DNA of 63,515 nt, the filler included, from Octopus bimaculoides (Eukaryota): NCBI RefSeq assembly GCF_001194135.2. It is 5 parts of 5 records of this genome, joined end to end, with 100 filler letters (N's around TTAATTAATTAA, not from the genome) between each part and the next. Parts side by side here need not be neighbours in the genome. Positions count along the whole stretch, not along the records: positions 38,064 to 47,853 come from NW_026398593.1; 4 more parts are not named here. One strand, given 5' to 3'. The translations under genes were made by a program, and so were the position numbers. The notes beneath the pieces were generated by a model. That model was not told the DNA's origin and searched no databases. It saw only the letters and a list, made by a program, of their open reading frames with translations. Numbering within the stretch: position 1 is the first letter of the stretch; every line of letters begins with the position of its first letter. Below, in pieces: positions 9,780-47,183 of the stretch.

Positions 9780-12700
9780 AATGAAACCTAATAAACTAGC
9801 TAACATACGGAGATATATTCTCAAAACAAAAAAAAAGTGTCAGAAATAGAAGGAAAAATACATCACGAAAACATAGTGACCACACAATGCCAAATATTAT
9901 CATAAGCACTGGGACTGTAAAATACAGAAACAAATGAAACCTGTCCAACAAAAACGAAGGAAACAACGAAAGACAACAAACCCAAACCGTAGGAATGCAT
10001 AATGATGAACAAAATGCACCAAACCAGAACACCACAGACAAAAATATGAACGGGAGGGAATACGAAATAAAACTAAAATCTAGAAACAGTGAAGGCGAAA
10101 TTAATGATTATGATACTCTGAAAATGAGTATTGTCAAAGAATTGAAAGCCACAGATCTCAGTATGGACCATCGATTTTACCTCCGCCAGATTAACATTGA
10201 TAATAAAATAATATCAATAATAAATAACAGAACTAATAGCCACAGAAACAAAAGTCAATAAGATCAGGTTAAATGATATAATATATCCAGCAACCTCTCT
10301 GTCATCAAAAGAAACTGGATACTCCCACAAACCCATCGAAACAGGAGTATCACCACCCAAGCAAACTCTGTGGACAAAATATATCCACAAAAAAAAAAAA
10401 AAAAAAATTAAAGAAAAGCTATGTCAGTCCTTAATGAAACTAGTAGGTAATCAACACTACTAAGCAACAAGAAGAGAAGAAAACTACCTCGTAAATATAC
10501 AGAATAAAGTATACTAGAGGGAAAAGAATAGCTGAATCGAGATATCCTCGGCTAAGCACAAATTATCCGCTGGTATACAAGCACCAACGTTTCTTTGAAC
10601 AAAACAAACAGTTCAATTCCAACCCCACAGCAAATACTAAATAACTGGCACGACAAAGCCCCAACTGCTGGTTAAAATATCTAACACATAAAACGCTGGC
10701 TGAGAAATTTTACGAAATAGTTGCACAGCCAGAGACAATTGCCTGAACGGCTCACTGAATGAAAACTATCGTAATTCTCAAATCCACGAAATGGCAAACC
10801 CACAAAATTACAGAGCGATAACATGTCTCGTTACAATTTACAAAACCTTTACTAAAGTCATATCGCAGGGAATGGGCAAACATCTGGAAGAAAACAATCC
10901 GTTTCCAGGATAACAGAATGGATTCTGAAGGGCTCATACGGATGTAAAGACCAGCTATTGTTCAATAAATCCACAACTGAAGACACCCATAGGAAAAAGA
11001 AGCGTAGCTTAGATCGATTATAGAAAGGCTTTTGATAGTATTCCCCACACGTGGATCCTAGAAACATTAGCCATGAACAAGGTCGCGCCCACAGTCATAA
11101 AATCAATAAAACATTCCATGAATCAGTGGCAGACAGTGCTATAGCTCCAGACAAAAGAGAGACCCATAAAAAAACAAAGCCATCACCATTATTAGAAGAA
11201 TATTCCAAGGAGATACGCTCTCTCCACTCCTTTTCTGCTTGGCACTGACACATTTATCCGACATGCTAAACAGAACTGGATGTGGATACGACTATTACGG
11301 CAAAGAATCAACCATCTTTTGTATATAGATGATTGAAAACTATGTGCTGCAAATGATAAACAGCTGGAAATATTATTACAGACAGTACGTCGAATTACCA
11401 AAGAAAAACGTACCTAGAAAAATGTGCGAAAGCAATATTGAAGAGACGAAAACTAGCTAAGAGTAACAGAATCACACTAGATAAAGCAAATGAAATAAAA
11501 GAGTTTGACCAAAGTCTGACACACAAACACTTAAGAATCAATGACCTAGATACGATACAATACACACACAAATGAAAGAGAATGTAAGAAAGGACGTGTT
11601 AGATTAATACTGAAAACAGAGCTGAATCCGAATATCAAGATAATAGTTATCAACAATCTTGCCGTCCCTGTTATAACTTACAGCTACAATATTCTTAACT
11701 GGAGTCTAAATGTACTTTTCAGCTTCCAGAATAGACAGGAAAACAAGAAGTGCTGGATTTAGGATGCACCACCAAAACTCTGACATATAAAGGTTATATA
11801 TATACAACGTATCAAAGGTGGTAGGGGACTTATTCAGCCAAAGACCAATAAAATAACCACCATGTAATTATAGAGAACAACAAAATAACCACCATAGCAT
11901 TACAGAAACACCTACTTCAGGAACAGATGAAAAATACAAAAAAGAAGTCATAGTTCCTAACAGCTATGAAGAAAAAGAAGCAACATGGGCTGTAAAGCAA
12001 CTGAAATCCAAACTAAAACTGCAACAACAAGGTATCATGAAAAGACAATGGCAAGAAATGCTTCTACATGACAAATATTGGATTGAGCTAAGCGCAATAG
12101 AAATAGCTGAAGCAAAATCACAAGAACGACTGAGAGGCTCTGAACTCAAAGTAGTGACTGAAGGACTTTTAATTGATCAAAGCCTTCCCACCAGAAATCA
12201 CCAAATACAGATTATGAGAAAAATACAACTAACTGCAATATGAGGTGATGGAGAAGAAACAATAAATGAGATTGTCTCTGGCTACCCAGTCATGGCTAAG
12301 AAGAAACATATTCACAGACACAACAGAGTTAGGGTTAGGGTTAGAGTTAGGGTTAGGGTTAGGGTTATGGTTAGGGTCCTTTATACACTGGAAATATGCC
12401 AGCACTATGGAATAACAACTAAAAAAAGATGGTATAGGTACACCCCCAGACAGGTCAGAGAAAATGAGAAAGCAACCATTATCTGGGATATGGTAATACA
12501 CACATATAGAGAAGTCAAGGCTAATATGTTGGATATAGTTGTCAGAAATGATCAAGAAAAAATTGCCTTCTAATCGATGTATCAATACCAATACATGACA
12601 ACGTTTCTCTAAAAGAAACTTTCAAAATACAAGGATCTGGAAATAATGAGGCAACTCGAATGTGGAGCCTAAAAACAAGGAATTCCTATTATAGTGGGTG

Positions 12701-13184: not shown

Positions 13185-14254
13185 TGATAGCAGGTACTGG
13201 CTCTCATGGCTTGTGATCTTAACTGACTGGAAGTGTTATCATGTACATGTTATGTCTTGGTGTAAAAGATGGACTACAATAAATATTCTGTCGAATACCA
13301 CACGTTTGCTTGTCAATTGTTCGACCTTAACCAGTTGAGCATATCTCATGCTGGTTGCCGATATGTGTATCTCTGATCACGCGCAGAAGTAGTGACGGAA
13401 TATCGTAATCATGTGTTGAGAGGAATTCATTGGAGTTTGAATAATTCATCTCTGGAAACATGGGTGTTTCGTTTAAAACACTTAAACAACCTTTATTCAA
13501 AGAACTTCTGAGGGGATGTGCAACTCAATGAAGAAAATTCTAACTGGACCCCACACGCAAATATATGCGCTGTTTATCTTGATATGAGATCACCATGTCG
13601 GGCACATATGGTTGTGATGCATGTGCCTGGTGTATCTGTCTCAGACGGGTAGTCATGATAGGTATATTAGGGTTGGAAAATTTGTACCCCAGTGCCACTT
13701 TGGTAGCAAGCAGTAGCAGGCAGTGGCTCTCATGGTTTCTGATCTTAACTGATTGGAAGTGTTACTATGTACATGATTTGTCTTGGTGTAAAGGACGAGC
13801 TACGGCAAATATTCTGCTCAATATCACAGATTCGCTTGTCATTTATTCGACCTTAACATTTCAAGTATGTCCTTTAGTAGCTGACGATATGTGCATCTCT
13901 GATCACGAACAGAAGTAGCGGAGGAGAATCATAGCCCCGTGTTGAGGAGAATCCTCTGGAGTTAGAATTATTCACCCCTGGAAATATGGGTGTTCTATTC
14001 AACATCTATAAAGAAACCTTATTCAGGGACCGTTTGAGCCAGATGGGCTATTCAACCTGAAAAAAAAAAAGAAACATCTAACTGAGACCCATCTGCAAAT
14101 TCATGCGCTGTTTATCGTGATAAAGATCACCATGCCGCGCACATATGGTTGTGAAGCATGTGCTGGTGTACCCTTATCAGAGAGCGTGTCATAATGGGTA
14201 TATTCGGTTTCCAATATTTGTGTCTCAGTACAAATATTCGCTGATTTCTCACTC

Positions 14255-40683: not shown

Positions 40684-41430
40684 NNNNNNNNNNNNNNNNN
40701 NNNNNNNNNNNNNNNNNNNNNNNNNNNNNNNNNNNNNNNNNNNNNNNNNNNNNNNNNNNNNNNNNNNNNNNNNNNNNNNNNNNNNNNNNNNNNNNNNNNN
40801 NNNNNNNNNNNNNNNNNNNNNNNNNNNNNNNNNNNNNNNNNNNNNNNNNNNNNNNNNNNNNNNNNNNNNNNNNNNNNNNNNNNNNNNNNNNNNNNNNNNN
40901 NNNNNNNNNNNNNNNNNNNNNNNNNNNNNNNNNNNNNNNNNNNNNNNNNNNNNNNNNNNNNNNNNNNNNNNNNNNNNNNNNNNNNNNNNNNNNNNNNNNN
41001 NNNNNNNNNNNNNNNNNNNNNNNNNNNNNNNNNNNNNNNNNNNNNNNNNNNNNNNNNNNNNNNNNNNNNNNNNNNNNNNNNNNNNNNNNNNNNNNNNNNN
41101 NNNNNNNNNNNNNNNNNNNNNNNNNNNNNNNNNNNNNNNNNNNNNNNNNNNNNNNNNNNNNNNNNNNNNNNNNNNNNNNNNNNNNNNNNNNNNNNNNNNN
41201 NNNNNNNNNNNNNNNNNNNNNNNNNNNNNNNNNNNNNNNNNNNNNNNNNNNNNNNNNNNNNNNNNNNNNNNNNNNNNNNNNNNNNNNNNNNNNNNNNNNN
41301 NNNNNNNNNNNNNNNNNNNNNNNNNNNNNNNNNNNNNNNNNNNNNNNNNNNNNNNNNNNNNNNNNNNNNNNNNNNNNNNNNNNGACAATTAAGTATACAA
41401 CAACAGCAAATGGACATTTCAAAGCTTATC

Positions 41431-41436
41431 TTTATT
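41431..41436 (-). terminator. Polyadenylation signal AATAAA of the MIB2-like gene
   Basis: TTTATT on the plus strand, about 207 nt beyond the TGA at 41643-41645. Confidence 0.55.
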
Positions 41437-41642
41437 TCAAAAGTTAATTTCTAACAAAGGATCTAAACCAGTGAAAGCGTTTCAATATGGTAAATAGATC
41501 TGCTAGAATTAGTAGCCAAATCCAGTGCACTGCGCCCCTTATCACAGTAAAGAAGGACACATTGGTCAATGTAGTCCTGGGTTTGCTATACTTTGGTCAG
41601 CATTCACCTGGGAGTAAACAACAGCAACATTTACACAGAACT

Positions 41643-41848
41643 TCACCGTTCGTTTAATGAAAGACATTCAAGTGCAGCAAAGCACTCCGCTTCTTTAAAA
41701 GCTTTTCTCAGGGTCTCAACTGTACGTTCCTCTGGTTCGCAATTGATAAACCACTCGCACAGCATTTGGTAACTCTGTTTTACTGTGTCACGAGGGAAAT
41801 CATTCTTGATAATGTCCTGGTCGATTGCTGCAATTCCTAAAAAAACAC
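41643..41848 (-). CDS. MIB2-like gene, terminal exon: Death-domain-like C-terminus
   Basis: Acceptor TCTTTTGCAG|GT (phase 1). GVFLGIAAIDQDIIKNDFPRDTVKQSYQMLCEWFINCEPEERTVETLRKAFKEAECFAALECLSLNER*, fitting the death-fold pattern LG+..I..I..D.P....Q.YQML..W....T+..L..A. Confidence 0.75.
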
Positions 41849-41894
41849 CTGCAAAAGATACAATGAGAAATAACAGCAACGGTAATACTCTTTC

Positions 41895-42090
41895 ACTTGT
41901 TTCAGTCATTTGGCTGCGGCCATGCTGGAGCACCGCCCTTTTAGTCGAGCAAGTCAACCCCAGCACTTATTCTTTGTAAGCCTAGTACTTATTCTATCAG
42001 TCTCTTTTTGCCGAACCGCTAAGTTACGGGGACGTAAACACACCAGCATCGGTTGTCAAGCGATGTTGTGGGGGGACAAACACAAACACA
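41895..42090 (+). mobile_element. SINE family C
   Basis: TTTCAGTCATTTGGCTGCGGCCATGCTGGAGCACCGCC..TTTTGCCGAACCGCTAAGTTACGGGGACGTAAAC; related pieces at 59860-60000, 38110 and 39470. Confidence 0.8.
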
Positions 42091-43469
42091 CATACATATA
42101 TATATATATATATATGGGAGAATTTACGAAAAAAACAACAGACGAAGACAGGTGGTGTAAACAACAAATGGATGTATTAATTTAACGCTCGGGAATAGAG
42201 AAAGTCTTTAATATTTTGAGCCTACGCTCTTCAACTGAAAGGAACACAGAAAGAAATAAGGAGAGAAAAAAAATATATATACATATANNNNNNNNNNNNN
42301 NNNNNNNNNNNNNNNNNNNNNNNNNNNNNNNNNNNNNNNNNNNNNNNNNNNNNNNNNNNNNNNNNNNNNNNNNNNNNNNNNNNNNNNNNNNNNNNNNNNN
42401 NNNNNNNNNNNNNNNNNNNNNNNNNNNNNNNNNNNNNNNNNNNNNNNNNNNNNNNNNNNNNNNNNNNNNNNNNNNNNNNNNNNNNNNNNNNNNNNNNNNN
42501 NNNNNNNNNNNNNNNNNNNNNNNNNNNNNNNNNNNNNNNNNNNNNNNNNNNNNNNNNNNNNNNNNNNNNNNNNNNNNNNNNNNNNNNNNNNNNNNNNNNN
42601 NNNNNNNNNNNNNNNNNNNNNNNNNNNNNNNNNNNNNNNNNNNNNNNNNNNNNNNNNNNNNNNNNNNNNNNNNNNNNNNNNNNNNNNNNNNNNNNNNNNN
42701 NNNNNNNNNNNNNNNNNNNNNNNNNNNNNNNNNNNNNNNNNNNNNNNNNNNNNNNNNNNNNNNNNNNNNNNNNNNNNNNNNNNNNNNNNNNNNNNNNNNN
42801 NNNNNNNNNNNNNNNNNNNNNNNNNNNNNNNNNNNNNNNNNNNNNNNNNNNNNNNNNNNNNNNNNNNNNNNNNNNNNNNNNNNNNNNNNNNNNNNNNNNN
42901 NNNNNNNNNNNNNNNNNNNNNNNNNNNNNNNNNNNNNNNNNNNNNNNNNNNNNNNNNNNNNNNNNNNNNNNNNNNNNNNNNNNNNNNNNNNNNNNNNNNN
43001 NNNNNNNNNNNNNNNNNNNNNNNNNNNNNNNNNNNNNNNNNNNNNNNNNNNNNNNNNNAATGGTTTGTGTATTATCATTATTATTATTACACCTGTAGAA
43101 AAAAGGTAATGTAAAAGGAGAAAGGGCTCTCTACCCCTTTTTATTTACTGACCAGGCTCCCGTGGCTTTTATGGGTTTTTCCACGTGTAACCTTTTAAGC
43201 GCCTCCCCCTATTGGGAGTTTTATTTGTTATATCATTCGCTGTTGTATATTTGTTTACACGAATGTTTTCTTCTTTTCGGACAAAACCCTTTGTACCCTT
43301 CGTCTGTCTTTGCGTTCTGAGTTCAAATTCCACAGAGGTTGATTTTTGCCTTTCATCCTTTCAGGGTCGATAAATTAAGTACCAGTTGTATACCGGGGTC
43401 AAACAAGTTATTCATCAAAGATCTAGCAACAAACATGTCACAACCACTTCAAGATGGATAAGCATATAC

Positions 43470-43520
43470 CTAATTCTTTTGTTAAACGTTGTTGCTGATA
43501 ATCTTTAATTTTAACTGTGT
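43470..43520 (-). CDS. MIB2-like gene, candidate 51-nt linker exon
   Basis: TGTATAG|AC...TTAG|GTATAT, phase 1-1 and in frame: (D)TVKIKDYQQQRLTKEL(G). Weak splice sites and no homology support. Confidence 0.35.
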
Positions 43521-43535
43521 CTATACAACAACAGT

Positions 43536-43905
43536 GGAGGCGCAATGGCCCAGTGGTTAGGGCAGCGGACTCGCGGTCATAGGATCGCGGTTTCGATTCC
43601 CAGACCGGGCGTTGTGAGTGTTTATTGAGCGAAAACACCTAAAGCTCCACGAGGCTCTGGCAGGGGATGGTGGCGAACCATGCTGTACTCTTTCACCACA
43701 ACTTTCTCTCACTCTTACTTCCTGTTTCTGTTGTACCTGTAATTCAAAGGGTCAGCCTTGTCACACTCTGTGTCACGCTGAATATCCCCGAGAACTACGT
43801 TAAGGGTACACGTGTCTGTGGAGTGCTCAGCCACTTGCACGTTGTTCCGTTGATCGGATCAACTGGAACCCTCGTCGTCGTAAGCGACGGAGTGCCAACA
43901 ACAAC
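43536..43905 (+). mobile_element. tRNA-derived SINE (family A), apparently full length
   Basis: GGAGGCGCAATGGCCCAGTGGTTAGGG..GGTTTCGATTCCCAGACCGGGCG, ending in (CAA)n. Confidence 0.9.
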
Positions 43906-43983
43906 ATAAAGTACATTACTCTACACAATAAAGTCAATGAGACAGGCAGGACAAACAGACAGATCAACAAAGAGTATTCTTAC

Positions 43984-44123
43984 CAACTTGACCTCTACTT
44001 GTTACAGGTTTTAAACACCTCAGACATCGTTTAAATGGAGTGTTTGAACATTCTTCACATGTCACAAGGTGTCCACATGGGTGGACTTTTGTTGTGGCCT
44101 TTCTATGTCCGCACCAAAAACAT
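43984..44123 (-). CDS. MIB2-like gene, RING (C3HC4, MIB/IAP type) exon
   Basis: TTTTGTCCACAG| (phase 2) and G|GTAAGA (phase 1). CFWCGHRKATTKVHPCGHLVTCEECSNTPFKRCLRCLKPV = C-x2-C..PCGH-x3-C-x2-C..C-x2-C. Confidence 0.9.
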
Positions 44124-44199
44124 CTGTGGACAAAACAGAGACATATCCAATCAACAACATTCATTTATAACAAATATTACATTGTGTACGGGTTTAGAG

Positions 44200-44345
44200 A
44201 AGAGAATATTATGAGACACGAAACTCAGCCAAATCAGATTGGAGCCTGGTGTTGCCATCCGGTTTCACCAGTCCTCAGTCAAATCGTCCAACCCATGCTA
44301 GCATGGAAAGCGGACGTTAAACGATGATGATGATGATAATGATGA
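44200..44345 (+). mobile_element. SINE family D 3' half with (GAT)n tail
   Basis: CAGATTGGAGCCTGG..CAGTCCTCAGTCAAATCGTCCAACCCATGCTAGCATGGAAAGCGGACGTTAAACGATGATG. Confidence 0.8.
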
Positions 44346-44619
44346 CTTCAATGACAAACAAGAGCACATCAGAAGTTCTCCTTTAAACCATTACATATTG
44401 GCAGAGCTGTGCGTAGCTAAATGGTGCACACACACACACACACACAAATTTCTAAACGCTTGTCTTCTCTCTCTGATACATCACAAAAATCGGTTACACA
44501 CTTTTCTATAAATATATTGCTTTTTGGGCTGCCTCTGATGAAAACACTAGCAACAGTATAATTTTTTGTTAGAATTAAAACTAAACACGCATATAAACAT
44601 AATTATGTGACATTTGTGC

Positions 44620-44812
44620 GGGTGACACGTAAAAGCACCCACTACACTCTCGGAGTGGCTGGCGTTAAGAAGGGCATCCAGCTGTAGAAACTCTGCCAAA
44701 TCAGATTGGAGCCTGGTGTAGCCATCTGGCTTACCAGTCCTCAGTCAAATCGTCCAACCCATGCTAGCATGGAAAGCGGACGTTAAACGATGATGATGAT
44801 GATGATGATGAT
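44620..44812 (+). mobile_element. SINE family D copy
   Basis: CACGTAAAAGCACCCACTACACTCTCGGAGTGG..GGACGTTAAAC(GAT)n. Confidence 0.85.
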
Positions 44813-44865
44813 ATACAAAATAGAAAATGTACTGGTTTATTTTTTCATTGCCAGGAAATACTTAC

Positions 44866-45041
44866 TGTGGTGGTAAAATTGTTTGTAATTTTGTTTTCAG
44901 CTTTGCGTTTCTAACGAGGTCCAATGGTGCGTTATTTTTGTCATTTTTATGGTAAAAATCGGCTCCCTGTTTGGCTAAATATCTGGTAACCACAATGCCA
45001 GAGAGCCTTTCGTCCTTTCTCAAGCTGAGCTCAGTGCAGCA
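44866..45041 (-). CDS. MIB2-like gene, ankyrin-to-RING exon
   Basis: CATTTGTAG| (phase 0) and CA|GTAAGT (phase 2), 176 nt: CCTELSLRKDERLSGIVVTRYLAKQGADFYHKNDKNNAPLDLVRNAKLKTKLQTILPP(Q). Phases match both neighbours. Confidence 0.9.
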
Positions 45042-45344
45042 CTACAAATGATGAAATGTAAAATGATAAAAATATTACACAAATATTCGTAACAGTTGCC
45101 CCTAATTACAGAACAGATCATATAAATCTAATTATAGCTTGTTTGTTACATAATATAACTCAGGTCATAAGGGGAGACTGGATCAGGAAATGGTAACAGA
45201 GGATGGGGTTGAGGGGTGGGAATTGATACATGACAAGCAAAGTTTGTCACTTTCTCACACACACACACACACACACAGATATGTCATCACAAATGCATCC
45301 TCGTTACAGGAGAAAAGCCATTGCCAAGAAGACTTACTGAAATG

Positions 45345-45905
45345 ATTCACGATTGTTGCCATGTGATGCCCTTATGTAACTTTTAAATCCAGCCAAGCTT
45401 TTACACATTTTTTATTACATACTGGACAACTGTGCTGGCTGGCAGGAGAAACAGGTGCCACCACATGCACTCTCTTAGCATGTCTTTTTAGACCTCCAAC
45501 TGAGAGGCAAACCCTTCCACATTTTACACACGTTCTGTCATGAATTCTAATAGCAACATCATTGTTTATCCCGGGTCGATTTCTGTGAGAATTTTTATGG
45601 CTCACCAGGCCTGCACGACTCAAACACGTCTGCCCACAAACCACACACATAAAAAAGCAACACTCTCTCACTTTCCACAGCTTCCCCCCTTCTAAGTCCC
45701 CTCCTAATTCTCTCCCTCCCTCTCAAACCATCTTCCTCCATCCATCATGGTCTTGTGCCTCCCTCTCCCAATCACCAGCTGCAATTCCTGTCTGTATTAG
45801 AACATTTTTAAGGCAATCCTTAAACCTTAGTATAAGGCTTATGTTCTAGTCTTTCAGCTCACCATACAACAGCTGCTTGGGCAGATGCTCATCACGCATC
45901 CTTAA
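45345..45905 (-). mobile_element. Intronic RTE LINE 3' end encoding three C2H2 fingers
   Basis: LPKQLLYGEL..RFKDCLK, then CVVC-x12-HKNSH, CVKC-x12-HAKRVH and a frameshifted third finger CPVCNKKC/KSLAGFKSYIRASH. Confidence 0.85.
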
Positions 45906-46031
45906 CAAATGCCCCCCCCATACTCCTACTGCCACTCCTCTCAAGCACCTCCACATTACTAATGGCCATTTTCCAGTTTATCCCCCCCAATTTTTCTCAT
46001 ACATACATTCACAAACAATCTTAAAACTTAC

Positions 46032-46244
46032 CTCATCTAAAATATCCAGGGGTGCACCCTCGGAATTAAACGCATCTCTTTCCATAGCAAGGTGCAAACA
46101 GTTATTCCCTTCACCGTCAACAGCATTTATGTTTGCACCCAGGGCTATTAACCGGTGCGTTATTCCGAGGTGACCCCGGGAGACAGCTTCAAGCAATGGT
46201 GTCATTTCGATATGGTTCTTCATGTCCAGTTTCAGTGAAACCGT
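46032..46244 (-). CDS. MIB2-like gene, ankyrin-repeat exon
   Basis: TTAATTCCACAG| (phase 0) and GAG|GTAAGT (phase 0), 213 nt: TVSLKLDMKNHIEMTPLLEAVSRGHLGITHRLIALGANINAVDGEGNNCLHLA... Confidence 0.92.
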
Positions 46245-46384
46245 CTGTGGAATTAAAAACAGAAAATGAAAATTGACATGAAAATCAGGGTGGATATCAG
46301 GGTGGATATCAAGGTGTCATTATTGTCTTCCATTGCATACTTGGTCAAACTGATCAGATACATTTGCTGTTTGTTTGTAAAGTT

Positions 46385-47080
46385 AACCTTCATGACATCA
46401 TCATCATCATCATTGTTTAACGTCCACTTTCCATGCTGGCATGGGTTGGACGGTTTGACTGAGGACTGGCAAGCCAGAAGGCTGCTCAAGGCCGCGAGCT
46501 GGCAGAAACGTTTGCGCGCCGGGCGAAATGCTTACCAGTATTTCGTCTGCTGTTACGTTCTGAGTTCAAATTCCGCCGAGGTCAACTTTGCCTTTCATCC
46601 TTTTGGAGTCGATTAAATAAGTACCAGTGACGCACTGGGGTCGATATAATCGACTTAATCCGTTTGCCTGTCCTTGTTTGTCCCTTCTATTTTTGGCCCC
46701 TTGTGGGCAATAAAGAAATAAGAAGGCTGCCCAAGGCTCACTCTGATCTGGCCAAGTTTGTACAACTGGATGCCCTTCCTAATGCCAACCACTCCGAGAG
46801 TGTAGTTGGTGCTTTTACGTGCCAGTCACACGGTACTGGCAACGGCCACGCTCAAAAAGGTGTTTTTTTATGTGCCACCTGCACGGGAGCCAGTCCAGTG
46901 GTACTGGCAACGACCTTGCTCGAATGATTTTCTAACGTGCCCCCAGCACAAGTGCTAGAAGACAACGCTGGTAACGATCACGCTCAAATGGTGCTATTTA
47001 CAGGCCACTAGCACGGAAGCCAGGCAGCTGCTCTGGCAATGAACACGCTCGGACAGTGCTGTTAGTGCTCCACTGGCACG
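46385..47080 (-). mobile_element. SINE family D, split by a younger insertion
   Basis: 46385-46492 and 46721-46830 are the reverse complement of contiguous parts of 44620-44812. Confidence 0.8.
46493..46720 (+). mobile_element. SINE family B nested in family D with a 17-bp TSD
   Basis: CGAGCTGGCAGAAACGTT..GAGTTCAAATTCCGCCGAGGTC. Flanks AGAAGGCTGCTCAAGGC (46476-46492) and AGAAGGCTGCCCAAGGC (46721-46737). Confidence 0.9.
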
Positions 47081-47146
47081 GATATTAATATTAAACAAAG
47101 CAATAAAATAGTAGAGAGTGTATATAATATGTATTTGTGAACTAAC

Positions 47147-47183
47147 CTGGGACAGCATCAAAGTCACCACATCAGAGCATTGG
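47147..47183 (-). CDS. MIB2-like gene, 37-nt ankyrin micro-exon
   Basis: Long pyrimidine tract TTTCTTTCCTCTTTCCATAACTTTCAG| (phase 2) and CAG|GTTAGT (phase 0): xQCSDVVTLMLSQ, in frame with the next exon. Most 5' exon found. Confidence 0.7.

What the first reader, a model, noticed from the sequence alone, without database searches (positions are those of the whole stretch)
41643..47183. Mind-bomb-like ligase with Ankyrin-RING-Death architecture
Seen: four exons (47147-44123 span) join with canonical GT-AG sites and matching phases (2-0, 0-0, 0-2, 2-1) into ankyrin repeats plus one MIB/IAP-type RING. A phase-1 terminal exon then encodes a death-fold-like helical domain, stop and AATAAA. Established: bilaterian MIB1/MIB2 end in RING fingers with no Death domain, and mammalian MIB2 ubiquitylates RIPK1 and cFLIP in death-receptor signalling. 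Inference: a lineage-specific, possibly multi-copy, MIB-derived E3 ligase recruited directly through DD-DD contacts in cephalopod immune or cell-death signalling. This is the best candidate for an undescribed system here. I cannot confirm that this architecture is unpublished.
Basis: partly seen in the sequence, partly recalled or inferred. Interest (0 to 1): 0.78.

Follow-up and report, generated by a model that had tools for sequence, protein, structure and literature searches.

The report
Octopus ankyrin-RING gene with partial death domain
This is the readable part of an Octopus bimaculoides gene from an Octopus-only family of Mind-bomb-derived ankyrin-RING proteins that gained a RIPK1-like death domain. 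In this copy only the last two thirds of that domain can be seen, and its RING is of a type with no detectable ligase activity in human MIB1.

Summary
The piece is O. bimaculoides scaffold LGKD02103728.1. RefSeq models this gene (XP_014783436) as ankyrin plus RING only.

Ankyrin repeats and a C3HC4_3 RING pass Pfam thresholds. The terminal exon is death-domain (DD) homologous but covers only Pfam positions 33-80 of 86, and scores 20.6 bits against a cut-off of 22.6.

Complete paralogues encode DD helices 1-2 on a separate 75-nt phase-1 exon, often preceded by cassette linker exons. No such exon is in the readable intron. It is also absent from the gapless O. vulgaris orthologue, which is itself decayed. 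The gap at 42288-43058 could still hide it.

Ank-RING-DD is real and multi-copy: 63 sequences, all that could be traced being Octopus. These proteins are already in RefSeq/UniProt but I found no paper describing them.

The RING matches MIB RING1/2, not the catalytic RING3, and lacks the usual E2-contact residues. Ligase activity is therefore unproven.

The DD profile is closest to the RIPK1 DD. The terminal exon is under purifying selection (dN/dS 0.13).

Verdict: a real, moderately interesting lineage-specific domain shuffle. This locus is incomplete or DD-truncated.

The parts
47147..47183 (-). Exon A, a 37-nt mini-exon encoding (x)QCSDVVTLMLSQ, the end of an ankyrin repeat. Upstream exons are lost in a 3-kb assembly gap.
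   Evidence: AG/GT flanks and frame. It matches '..QHYDVVTLMLSQ' in paralogues. It is conserved in the O. vulgaris orthologue L003 at 9878-9914.
46032..46244 (-). Exon B, 71 codons, ankyrin repeats (TPLLEAVSRGHLGITHRLIALGANINAVDGEGNNCLHLA...).
   Evidence: Pfam Ank_4/Ank. tblastn 73-76% identity to paralogues.
44866..45041 (-). Exon C, a degenerate terminal ankyrin repeat plus spacer (CCTELSLRKDERLSGIVVTRYLAKQGADFYHKNDKNNAPLDL...PPQ).
   Evidence: It aligns to the MIB1 ANK structure 8v0e.
43984..44123 (-). Exon D, a single C3HC4 RING of the MIB RING1/2 type (CFWCGHRKATTKVHPCGHLVTCEECSNTPFKRCLRCLKPV). It ends in phase 1.
   Evidence: Pfam zf-C3HC4_3 33 bits. BLOSUM scores are 85-106 against MIB RING1/2 and 36-54 against RING3.
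41849..43983 (-). Intron between the RING exon and the terminal exon. It contains the assembly gap 42288-43058 and a 390-bp SINE-like insertion (43514-43903). No DD helix-1/2 exon or linker exon is detectable in the readable parts.
   Evidence: The helix-1 exon HMM gives a best E of 7 here, against 8e-14 for the positive control. Collinearity with L003.
41643..41848 (-). Terminal coding exon (phase 1) encoding the end of DD helix 2 plus helices 3-6, with stop TGA at 41645-41643.
   Evidence: Pfam Death positions 33-80/86, 20.6 bits. 87% identical to the O. sinensis DD protein P0055. dN/dS 0.13, p=1e-5, against the O. vulgaris orthologue.
41384..41642 (-). 3' UTR with AATAAA at 41436-41431. It is cut by the next gap at 41383.
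   Evidence: Read directly. The UTR is conserved at 82-83% with L001 and L003.

Best explanation
The window holds the 3' part of an Octopus bimaculoides gene (RefSeq XP_014783436, 'MIB2-like'). It belongs to an Octopus-restricted multigene family. The family kept the ankyrin-repeat plus first-RING portion of a Mind-bomb-like ancestor. It replaced the catalytic C-terminal RING3 with a flexible repeat linker and a RIPK1-like death domain (DD), all carried on phase-1 cassette exons.

In this copy the readable sequence encodes ankyrin repeats, one RING1/2-type RING and DD helices 3-6 only. The most likely product is the direct RING-to-terminal-exon splice, which the Gnomon model for the O. vulgaris orthologue and three paralogue models also use.

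Likely mechanism for the family (inferred): the DD docks the protein onto DD oligomers, the ankyrin repeats hold a client, and the RING recruits an E2 in members that keep the CPxCR motif.

For this copy (inferred, about 35-40%): with helices 1-2 missing and a CLRCLK RING, it is more likely a non-catalytic, DD-impaired modulator or a decaying variant than an active DD-recruited ligase.

Shown: exons, domains, family, gene structure, selection on the terminal exon. Inferred: splicing across the gap, binding partners, any ubiquitin-ligase or signalling role.

The confidence given (0.55) is for the whole statement. Identity and family membership alone are about 0.9. The locus-level reading (direct splice, truncated DD) is about 0.4.
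For: Exon structure and frame. Domains.

Identity of the locus: 100% match to XP_014783436 and to scaffold LGKD02103728.1.

Family:
- 56 and 44 Octopus-only hits, many with precomputed Ank + zf-C3HC4_3 + Death.
- A full HMMER scan of 1.84 billion representatives gave 63 RING+DD sequences among everything retrieved. Every one whose source could be traced is Octopus.
- Complete paralogues pass Pfam Death at 38-43 bits.

DD type: the family DD profile hits the RIPK1 DD at 4e-11, then ankyrin-3, PIDD, Fas and FADD. The AF2 model of paralogue P0037 has a six-helix DD superposing on ankyrin-G, RAIDD and FADD DDs (TM 0.78-0.85).

Gene structure: the phase-1 intron inside the DD is conserved in L001 and L004, with a separate 75-nt helix-1/2 exon.

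Direct RING-to-terminal-exon models exist: P0013 for the orthologue, and P0018, P0019 and P0048 for paralogues. In all, 12 of 63 have a DD starting at HMM position 14 or later.

The gapless O. vulgaris orthologue has no helix-1 exon.

MIB origin: RING1/2-type similarity, and paralogue P0044 retains Ank-RING-RING3.

The terminal exon is under purifying selection (dN/dS 0.13, p 1e-5).
Against: No transcript evidence for any junction was available. No transcript-derived protein containing this terminal exon turned up.

The gap (length only estimated) could hide the helix-1/2 exon and linker exons. The O. vulgaris orthologue is a poor guide because it is itself decayed: TGT>TGA at the first RING cysteine, 35-bp and 2-bp deletions, and a lost donor in exon B.

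The closest DD relative, O. sinensis L001, does have four linker exons and the helix-1 exon.

A four-helix DD remnant may not fold, yet AF2 gives it pLDDT 85-92. This may merely reflect the alignment used.

The ankyrin and RING exons show relaxed constraint (dN/dS 0.65, not significant).

Lack of RING1/2 activity is known only for human MIB1 with UbcH5B.
Confidence: 0.55

Rival explanations
1. The locus encodes a complete Ank-RING-DD protein, because the 75-nt helix-1/2 exon (and perhaps linker exons) lies in the unread gap. The protein would be an active E3 recruited by DD-DD contacts.
For: 50 of 63 family sequences have a full DD. The closest DD relative, L001, has the extra exons. All visible exons are intact with canonical splice sites. 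The terminal exon is strongly constrained. About 1.3 kb of the O. vulgaris intron has no counterpart in the readable window, so it presumably corresponds to the gap.
Against: The gapless orthologous intron in O. vulgaris has no such exon. The window intron is about 2.1 kb, whereas the RING-to-terminal-exon distance is 4.7 kb in L004, and the helix-1 exon lies 2.35 kb upstream of the terminal exon in L001. The RING lacks the CPxCR E2-contact motif and is of the RING1/2 type, which shows no activity in human MIB1 constructs lacking RING3.
Confidence: 0.3
2. The locus is a decaying or already non-functional family copy (a pseudogene in the making), and the open exons are remnants.
For: The O. vulgaris orthologue carries a premature stop in the RING, frameshifting deletions and a lost donor. 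Ankyrin plus RING exons give dN/dS 0.65, not different from neutral. The N-terminal exons were not found in the readable 10 kb upstream. The helix-1/2 exon was not found. The scaffold is unplaced.
Against: All five O. bimaculoides exons are open, free of indels and keep GT-AG sites. The terminal exon gives dN/dS 0.13. The missing parts coincide with assembly gaps rather than with visible lesions.
Confidence: 0.2
3. The terminal exon is not part of the ankyrin-RING transcript. It belongs to a separate short DD-only transcription unit.
For: RefSeq does not join it to the RING exon and reads into the intron instead (GKNTLC*). Many short DD-only models exist in Octopus, for example P0067-P0073, P0077 and P0112.
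Against: The strand, order and phase all fit. The O. vulgaris Gnomon model P0013 joins the two exons. The exon starts at an acceptor in phase 1 with no upstream ATG-initiated DD sequence. The short DD-only models look like fragments.
Confidence: 0.1

Closest known systems
Mind bomb E3 ligases MIB1/MIB2
   Same: The ankyrin-repeat block is followed directly by a C3HC4_3 RING with the RING1/2 signature (..PCGH..tC..C....kkCL.C). The ankyrin region aligns to the MIB1 ANK crystal structure 8v0e. Paralogue P0044 still has the MIB RING3-type C-terminal RING.
   Different: No MIB/HERC2-ZZ-REP substrate-binding N-terminus appears in any full-length family member. There is only one RING. The catalytic coiled-coil-RING3 is replaced by a repeat linker and a death domain.
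cIAP1/cIAP2 (BIRC2/3) and oyster BIR-DD-RING IAPs (BIRC11 type, PMC8917759)
   Same: A death-fold domain and a C3HC4_3-type RING sit in one polypeptide. In mammals these act in RIPK1-containing receptor complexes (established knowledge).
   Different: There are no BIR or UBA domains. The order is reversed, with the RING before the death fold. The death fold is a true DD rather than a CARD. The RING is internal, not the C-terminal dimerising type.
RIPK1 death domain, and the octopus DD-only 'RIPK1-like' protein (P0123, Argonauta P0126)
   Same: RIPK1 DD is the best solved-structure match of the family DD profile (4e-11). The cephalopod DD-only proteins P0123 and P0126 are among the highest-scoring DD proteins without a RING in the HMMER scan (91.5 and 88.8 bits).
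   Different: There is no kinase domain or RHIM. In the window copy, helices 1-2 are not encoded in the readable sequence.
Ankyrin-repeat plus DD proteins (ankyrin-1/2/3, ANKDD1A, NF-kB p100/p105)
   Same: They have N-terminal ankyrin repeats and a C-terminal DD. The ankyrin-G DD is a top structural match (TM 0.78, rmsd 1.4 A) for the paralogue model.
   Different: There are no ZU5-UPA or Rel-homology modules, and those proteins have no RING between the repeats and the DD.

Membership tests
Mind bomb (MIB1/MIB2) | N-terminal MIB/HERC2-ZZ-MIB/HERC2 and REP substrate-recognition modules | tested here: not met
   The window N-terminus is cut by a gap. Full-length paralogues (P0012, P0044, P0037) show only Ank, zf-C3HC4_3 and Death in Pfam, and nothing was found 10 kb upstream.
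Mind bomb (MIB1/MIB2) | Ankyrin-repeat block followed by RING1/RING2-type fingers | tested here: met
   MIB1 ANK structure hit at 5.5e-12. The RING scores 85-106 against MIB RING1/2. The RING-only hits among the 150 best of the profile scan are canonical MIB-like proteins with two or three RINGs.
Mind bomb (MIB1/MIB2) | C-terminal coiled-coil RING3, the catalytic and dimerising RING | tested here: not met
   The window RING scores only 36-54 against RING3. The C-terminus is DD-derived. RING3 is required for activity in human MIB1.
Death domain (Pfam PF00531, DD subfamily of the death fold) | Score above the Pfam gathering threshold over the whole six-helix domain | tested here: not met
   Window terminal exon: 20.6 bits against 22.6, positions 33-80/86. 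Paralogues with the extra exon score 36-43 bits over positions 2-82. The family meets the feature, but this locus as readable does not.
Death domain (Pfam PF00531, DD subfamily of the death fold) | Six-helix bundle fold | tested here: inconclusive
   The AF2 model of the window product has four helices plus a stub, with no DD among the top 50 Foldseek hits. The paralogue P0037 model has all six helices and DD hits at TM 0.76-0.85.
RING-HC E3 ligases (zf-C3HC4_3) | Eight zinc ligands with C3HC4 spacing | tested here: met
   CFWC...C.H...C..C...C..C, Pfam 33 bits against a cut-off of 27.
RING-HC E3 ligases (zf-C3HC4_3) | E2-contact residues (hydrophobic after C1, Pro-Ile after C7, linchpin Arg after C8) and demonstrable ubiquitin transfer | tested here: inconclusive
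   The window has CFWC and CLRCLK, so Pro and the linchpin Arg are absent. 18 of 57 family RINGs keep CPxCR (CPICRQ, CPMCRQ, CPECRQ) and one more has CLKCRQ. Activity cannot be tested with these tools.
IAP (BIR-containing) death-fold-RING proteins | At least one BIR domain | tested here: not met
   No BIR hit in the window peptide or in paralogues.

The most novel reading that the evidence does not exclude
Octopus evolved its own family, roughly 10-15 genes per species, in which a RIPK1-type death domain was exon-shuffled onto a MIB-derived ankyrin-RING scaffold. Every added piece (26-aa or 17-aa linker repeats and DD helices 1-2) is a symmetrical phase-1 cassette exon. Alternative splicing could therefore tune linker length and switch DD competence on or off. 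This would give DD-competent and DD-incompetent (possibly dominant-negative) isoforms of a putative receptor-complex ubiquitin ligase or adaptor. The window locus would be a fixed 'off' form, or a member whose cassette exons sit in the gap.
Probability: 0.3. Interest if true: 0.6.

Novelty: new variant of a known kind. Interest (0 to 1): 0.4.

Why it matters
Death-fold adaptors and RING ligases are the core wiring of animal innate-immune and cell-death complexes. Lineage-specific reshuffling of them is well known in oysters, amphioxus, cnidarians and echinoderms. Cephalopods, by contrast, have been noted to have very few or no TRADD-N domains, a related adaptor class (PMC8195603).

An Octopus-restricted Ank-RING-DD expansion would be a cephalopod-specific addition to that repertoire. 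It would also be a clean example of domain gain through symmetrical phase-1 exons.

It further raises a testable question: can MIB RING1/2-type fingers, which show no detectable activity in human MIB1, be active ligase modules when placed in a new context?

For this particular locus the value is limited. It is incomplete, possibly DD-truncated, and its orthologue in O. vulgaris is already broken.

Tried and rejected
1. Candidate 51-nt mini-exon at 43518-43468 (DTVKIKDYQQQRLTKEL, tag|..|gtatat, phase 1-1), suggested by a weak tblastn hit (E 4.4). Rejected for four reasons. The acceptor is created by a lineage-specific SINE border and is not conserved in O. vulgaris. Conservation is uniform into the supposed intron. 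Most differences are non-synonymous. The helix-1 HMM does not score it.

2. Search for N-terminal ankyrin exons in 10 kb upstream (L002). None were found in readable sequence, where a 3-kb gap abuts the piece. The O. vulgaris orthologue does have an upstream ankyrin exon at L003 8265-8426.

3. Treating O. sinensis L001 as the orthologue. Only the terminal exon and 3' UTR match L003 (92%), so its status as orthologue or paralogue is unresolved.

4. Relic of a linker exon in the O. vulgaris intron. Intron segments resemble sequences upstream of the L001 linker exons (70-75%), but the similarity stops about 30 nt before where the exon would be. They may simply be dispersed repeats.

5. Similarity between the gap flanks and the introns around the helix-1 exon of L001 and L004. 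Only repeats and exon-adjacent stubs matched.

6. Foldseek on the window model returned only ankyrin hits in the top 50.

7. ARAGORN on the SINE-like insertion found no tRNA.

8. Look-up of the RefSeq v1 protein (P0001) in the contig index found nothing on record. The v2 protein P0057 worked.

Full report
**What is in the sequence**

On the minus strand, five exons are bounded by canonical AG...GT sites:
- A, 47183-47147
- B, 46244-46032
- C, 45041-44866
- D, 44123-43984
- terminal exon, 41848-41643

It ends at TGA (41645-41643), with AATAAA at 41436-41431.

Pfam finds ankyrin repeats (Ank_4 3.5e-9) and a zf-C3HC4_3 RING (33 bits against a cut-off of 27) above threshold. It finds a Death-domain match below threshold. 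The terminal exon alone scores 20.6 bits against 22.6, E 4.9e-4, and covers only profile positions 33-80 of 86. The terminal exon is therefore DD-derived, but it is the end of helix 2 plus helices 3-6, not a whole domain.

**Origin and existing annotation**

The peptide is 100% identical over exons A-D to O. bimaculoides XP_014783436 ('E3 ubiquitin-protein ligase MIB2[-like]'). The piece is a 100% match to the unplaced scaffold LGKD02103728.1 of assembly GCA_001194135.2.

The RefSeq model starts at an ATG in the intron before exon A and reads through the RING-exon donor (GKNTLC*). It therefore contains no DD exon. The piece is bounded by assembly gaps: 3 kb upstream and 2.8 kb downstream. No upstream ankyrin exons are readable within 10 kb.

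**The gap**

The gap at 42288-43058 lies inside the intron between the RING exon and the terminal exon, and neither flank is coding.

The O. vulgaris locus L003 comes from a gapless chromosome-level assembly. It is collinear with the window across exons and introns at 82-90% nucleotide identity. It has the RING exon (13868-14007) and the terminal exon (15541-15746) in the same order and orientation, 1.53 kb apart. So both sides of the gap belong to one locus.

About 1.3 kb of the O. vulgaris intron has no counterpart in the readable window and presumably corresponds to the gap. A 390-bp block at 43903-43514 is an insertion relative to O. vulgaris. A 90% identical copy lies in the intron of a paralogue, so it is a dispersed repeat.

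**The family**

Two word-indexed searches returned 56 and 44 homologues. All are from O. bimaculoides, O. sinensis or O. vulgaris. Most are named MIB1/MIB2-like, and many carry precomputed Ank + zf-C3HC4_3 + Death hits.

A full HMMER scan of 1.84 billion representative proteins used a RING+DD profile and gave 1672 hits at E<1e-3. I inspected the best 150 with local RING and DD HMMs.
Of these, 50 have a full DD and 12 have a DD starting at the terminal exon.
- They form 42, 36 and 29 clusters at 90%, 80% and 70% identity.
- Every one whose source I could trace is Octopus.
- The other hits among the 150 have DDs only (multi-DD proteins) or RINGs only (MIB-like proteins with two or three RINGs). 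Their source species were not looked up.
- Argonauta hians appears only with a DD-only protein.

Clustering at 50% identity and the 150-hit display limit mean that close non-Octopus octopods cannot be excluded.

Complete members pass Pfam for all three domains (P0012, P0037). Family genes lie in tandem: a second ankyrin gene sits 2.6 kb downstream of P0037.

**Gene structure of complete members**

In O. sinensis L001 the DD is split by a phase-1 intron.
- A 75-nt exon encodes helices 1-2 (ESLKLNGEYLQRAAKKLGGNWQQAG).
- It lies 2.35 kb upstream of the terminal exon.
- It is preceded by four 78-nt phase-1 linker exons (26-aa repeats).

In O. bimaculoides L004 (P0037) the same layout holds. The RING exon is followed after 2.7 kb by the helix-1/2 exon, and after a further 1.9 kb by the terminal exon.

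The RING exon also ends in phase 1, so any subset of these cassette exons can be skipped in frame. This explains two things. Second, RefSeq lists many isoforms that differ in linker length, including DD-truncated ones. Examples are P0218, P0109 and P0217 from one gene, and P0013, P0018, P0019 and P0048.

**Is the missing exon present here?**

I built an HMM from 41 helix-1/2 exon peptides.
- It finds the positive control in L001 at 8e-14.
- It finds nothing in the readable window intron (best E 7).
- It finds nothing in the gapless O. vulgaris intron (best E 1.3).

A weak 51-nt candidate was examined and rejected.

The O. vulgaris copy is a poor proxy, because it is decayed. The first RING cysteine is TGA. 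Exon B has 35-bp and 2-bp deletions and a destroyed donor.

I therefore put the chance that the gap hides the exon at about 30%. The direct-splice, DD-truncated product is the most likely reading, and pseudogenisation is a serious alternative.

**Selection**

Between the window and its O. vulgaris orthologue, exons C, D and E align without indels. Overall dN/dS is 0.32 (p 1.6e-4).
- Terminal exon alone: 0.13 (p 1e-5).
- Ankyrin plus RING exons: 0.65 (not significant).

The terminal exon's frame has clearly been read as protein. The difference in dS between the two parts (0.55 against 0.16) is unexplained and might reflect gene conversion.

**Which death domain, which RING**

The family DD profile hits the RIPK1 DD best among solved structures (4e-11). 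Ankyrin-3, PIDD, Fas, FADD, CRADD and TRADD follow. It is a true DD, not a CARD, DED or PYD.

AF2 models:
- Paralogue P0037 has pLDDT 87.4. Its six-helix DD superposes on ankyrin-G, RAIDD, FADD and RIPK1 DDs at TM 0.76-0.85. Its ankyrin part superposes on the MIB1 ANK structure.
- The window product has pLDDT 85.2, with four helices and a stub at the C-terminus. There are no DD hits in its top 50.

The window RING scores 85-106 (BLOSUM62) against RING1/RING2 of five canonical MIB-like proteins (70-77 against a sixth, fragmentary one), and 36-54 against their RING3. Paralogue P0044 keeps Ank-RING-RING3, and its second RING scores 109-141 against RING3. This supports descent from the C-terminal half of a MIB-like gene, with RING3 replaced by linker and DD exons.

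In human MIB1, ANK-RING1-2 without ccRING3 has no detectable ligase activity with UbcH5B, and RING1/2 are dispensable (bioRxiv 10.1101/2024.03.01.582834). The window RING also has CLRCLK where E2-binding RINGs have CP(I/M)CR. 18 of 57 family RINGs keep CPxCR, and one more has CLKCRQ. Ligase activity of this copy is therefore doubtful, though some paralogues may have it.

**Comparison with known systems**

Death fold plus C3HC4_3 RING in one protein is established in cIAP1/2 (CARD-RING, my knowledge) and described for oyster BIR-DD-RING IAPs (PMC8917759). Ankyrin repeats plus DD occur in ankyrins and NF-kB precursors (my knowledge).

The specific order Ank, MIB-type RING, linker, DD was seen only in Octopus. 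Literature searches found no description of it.

The proteins are, however, already deposited and auto-annotated. UniProt calls some of them 'Death domain-containing protein'.

I therefore class it as a new variant of a known kind: a lineage-specific domain shuffle. Interest is moderate, and lower still for this incomplete locus.

Noticed in passing
window 45372-45671 (-), within the block 45283-45999: A 99-aa ORF with C2H2 zinc fingers (Pfam zf-C2H2_4, 1.4e-6) lies inside the intron between exons B and C. The roughly 700-bp block has no counterpart in the O. vulgaris orthologue, so it is a lineage-specific insertion, probably a transposon fragment.
   Followed up: partly
window 43514-43903; partial inverted copy at 39585-39713: A 390-bp insertion relative to O. 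vulgaris. A 90% identical copy lies in the intron of paralogue L004. It is SINE-like with a tRNA-like end, but ARAGORN calls no tRNA.
   Followed up: partly
window 44687-44811 and 44220-44345; inverted at about 46396-46492: Repeated element beginning (CAT)n-GTTTAACGTCCGCTTTCCATGCTAGCATGGGTTGGACG. It is present several times in the introns and also in the introns of L001 and L003. It is a common Octopus dispersed repeat.
   Followed up: no
window 38217-38390 (-): First coding exon of the next gene downstream. It has a signal peptide (MKNLVVFLFVFVVGLWLTEG...) ending at a GTAAGT donor. The scaffold annotation shows a gene with calcium-binding EGF domains starting here.
   Followed up: partly
L003 (O. 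vulgaris orthologue) 10465-10700 and 13868-13872: The orthologue is broken. Exon B has 35-bp and 2-bp deletions and its donor is destroyed, and the first RING cysteine codon is TGA. Gnomon still models a 170-aa 'isoform X3' (P0013) around these lesions.
   Followed up: yes
P0114 / P0221 (O. bimaculoides GPR126-like adhesion GPCR): An LRR-GPS-7TM adhesion GPCR carries a DD of the same family type at its cytoplasmic C-terminus (Pfam Death 27.6 bits). It is a possible membrane docking partner for the Ank-RING-DD proteins.
   Followed up: partly
P0044 (O. bimaculoides, same 10-Mb contig as P0028 and P0036): This paralogue has ankyrin repeats, a RING1/2-type RING and a MIB RING3-type C-terminal RING, and no DD. 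It is a likely intermediate between MIB and the Ank-RING-DD family.
   Followed up: partly
window exons C and D versus the terminal exon, compared with L003: Synonymous divergence differs threefold between the ankyrin/RING exons (dS 0.16) and the terminal exon (dS 0.55). The O. vulgaris and O. sinensis (L001) terminal exons are nearly identical (dS 0.05) although their upstream regions do not match. This may reflect exon-level gene conversion or recombination among paralogues.
   Followed up: no
L001 283-7195 (O. sinensis): Four near-identical 78-nt linker exons (APKFEDRCVQTEA[T/I]CQELGAASQAIG) sit in tandem units of about 2.1-2.6 kb. Other subfamilies use 17-aa (51-nt) VCPKxEEKAVQTVAES repeats. 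The number of cysteine-containing repeats varies between predicted isoforms.
   Followed up: partly
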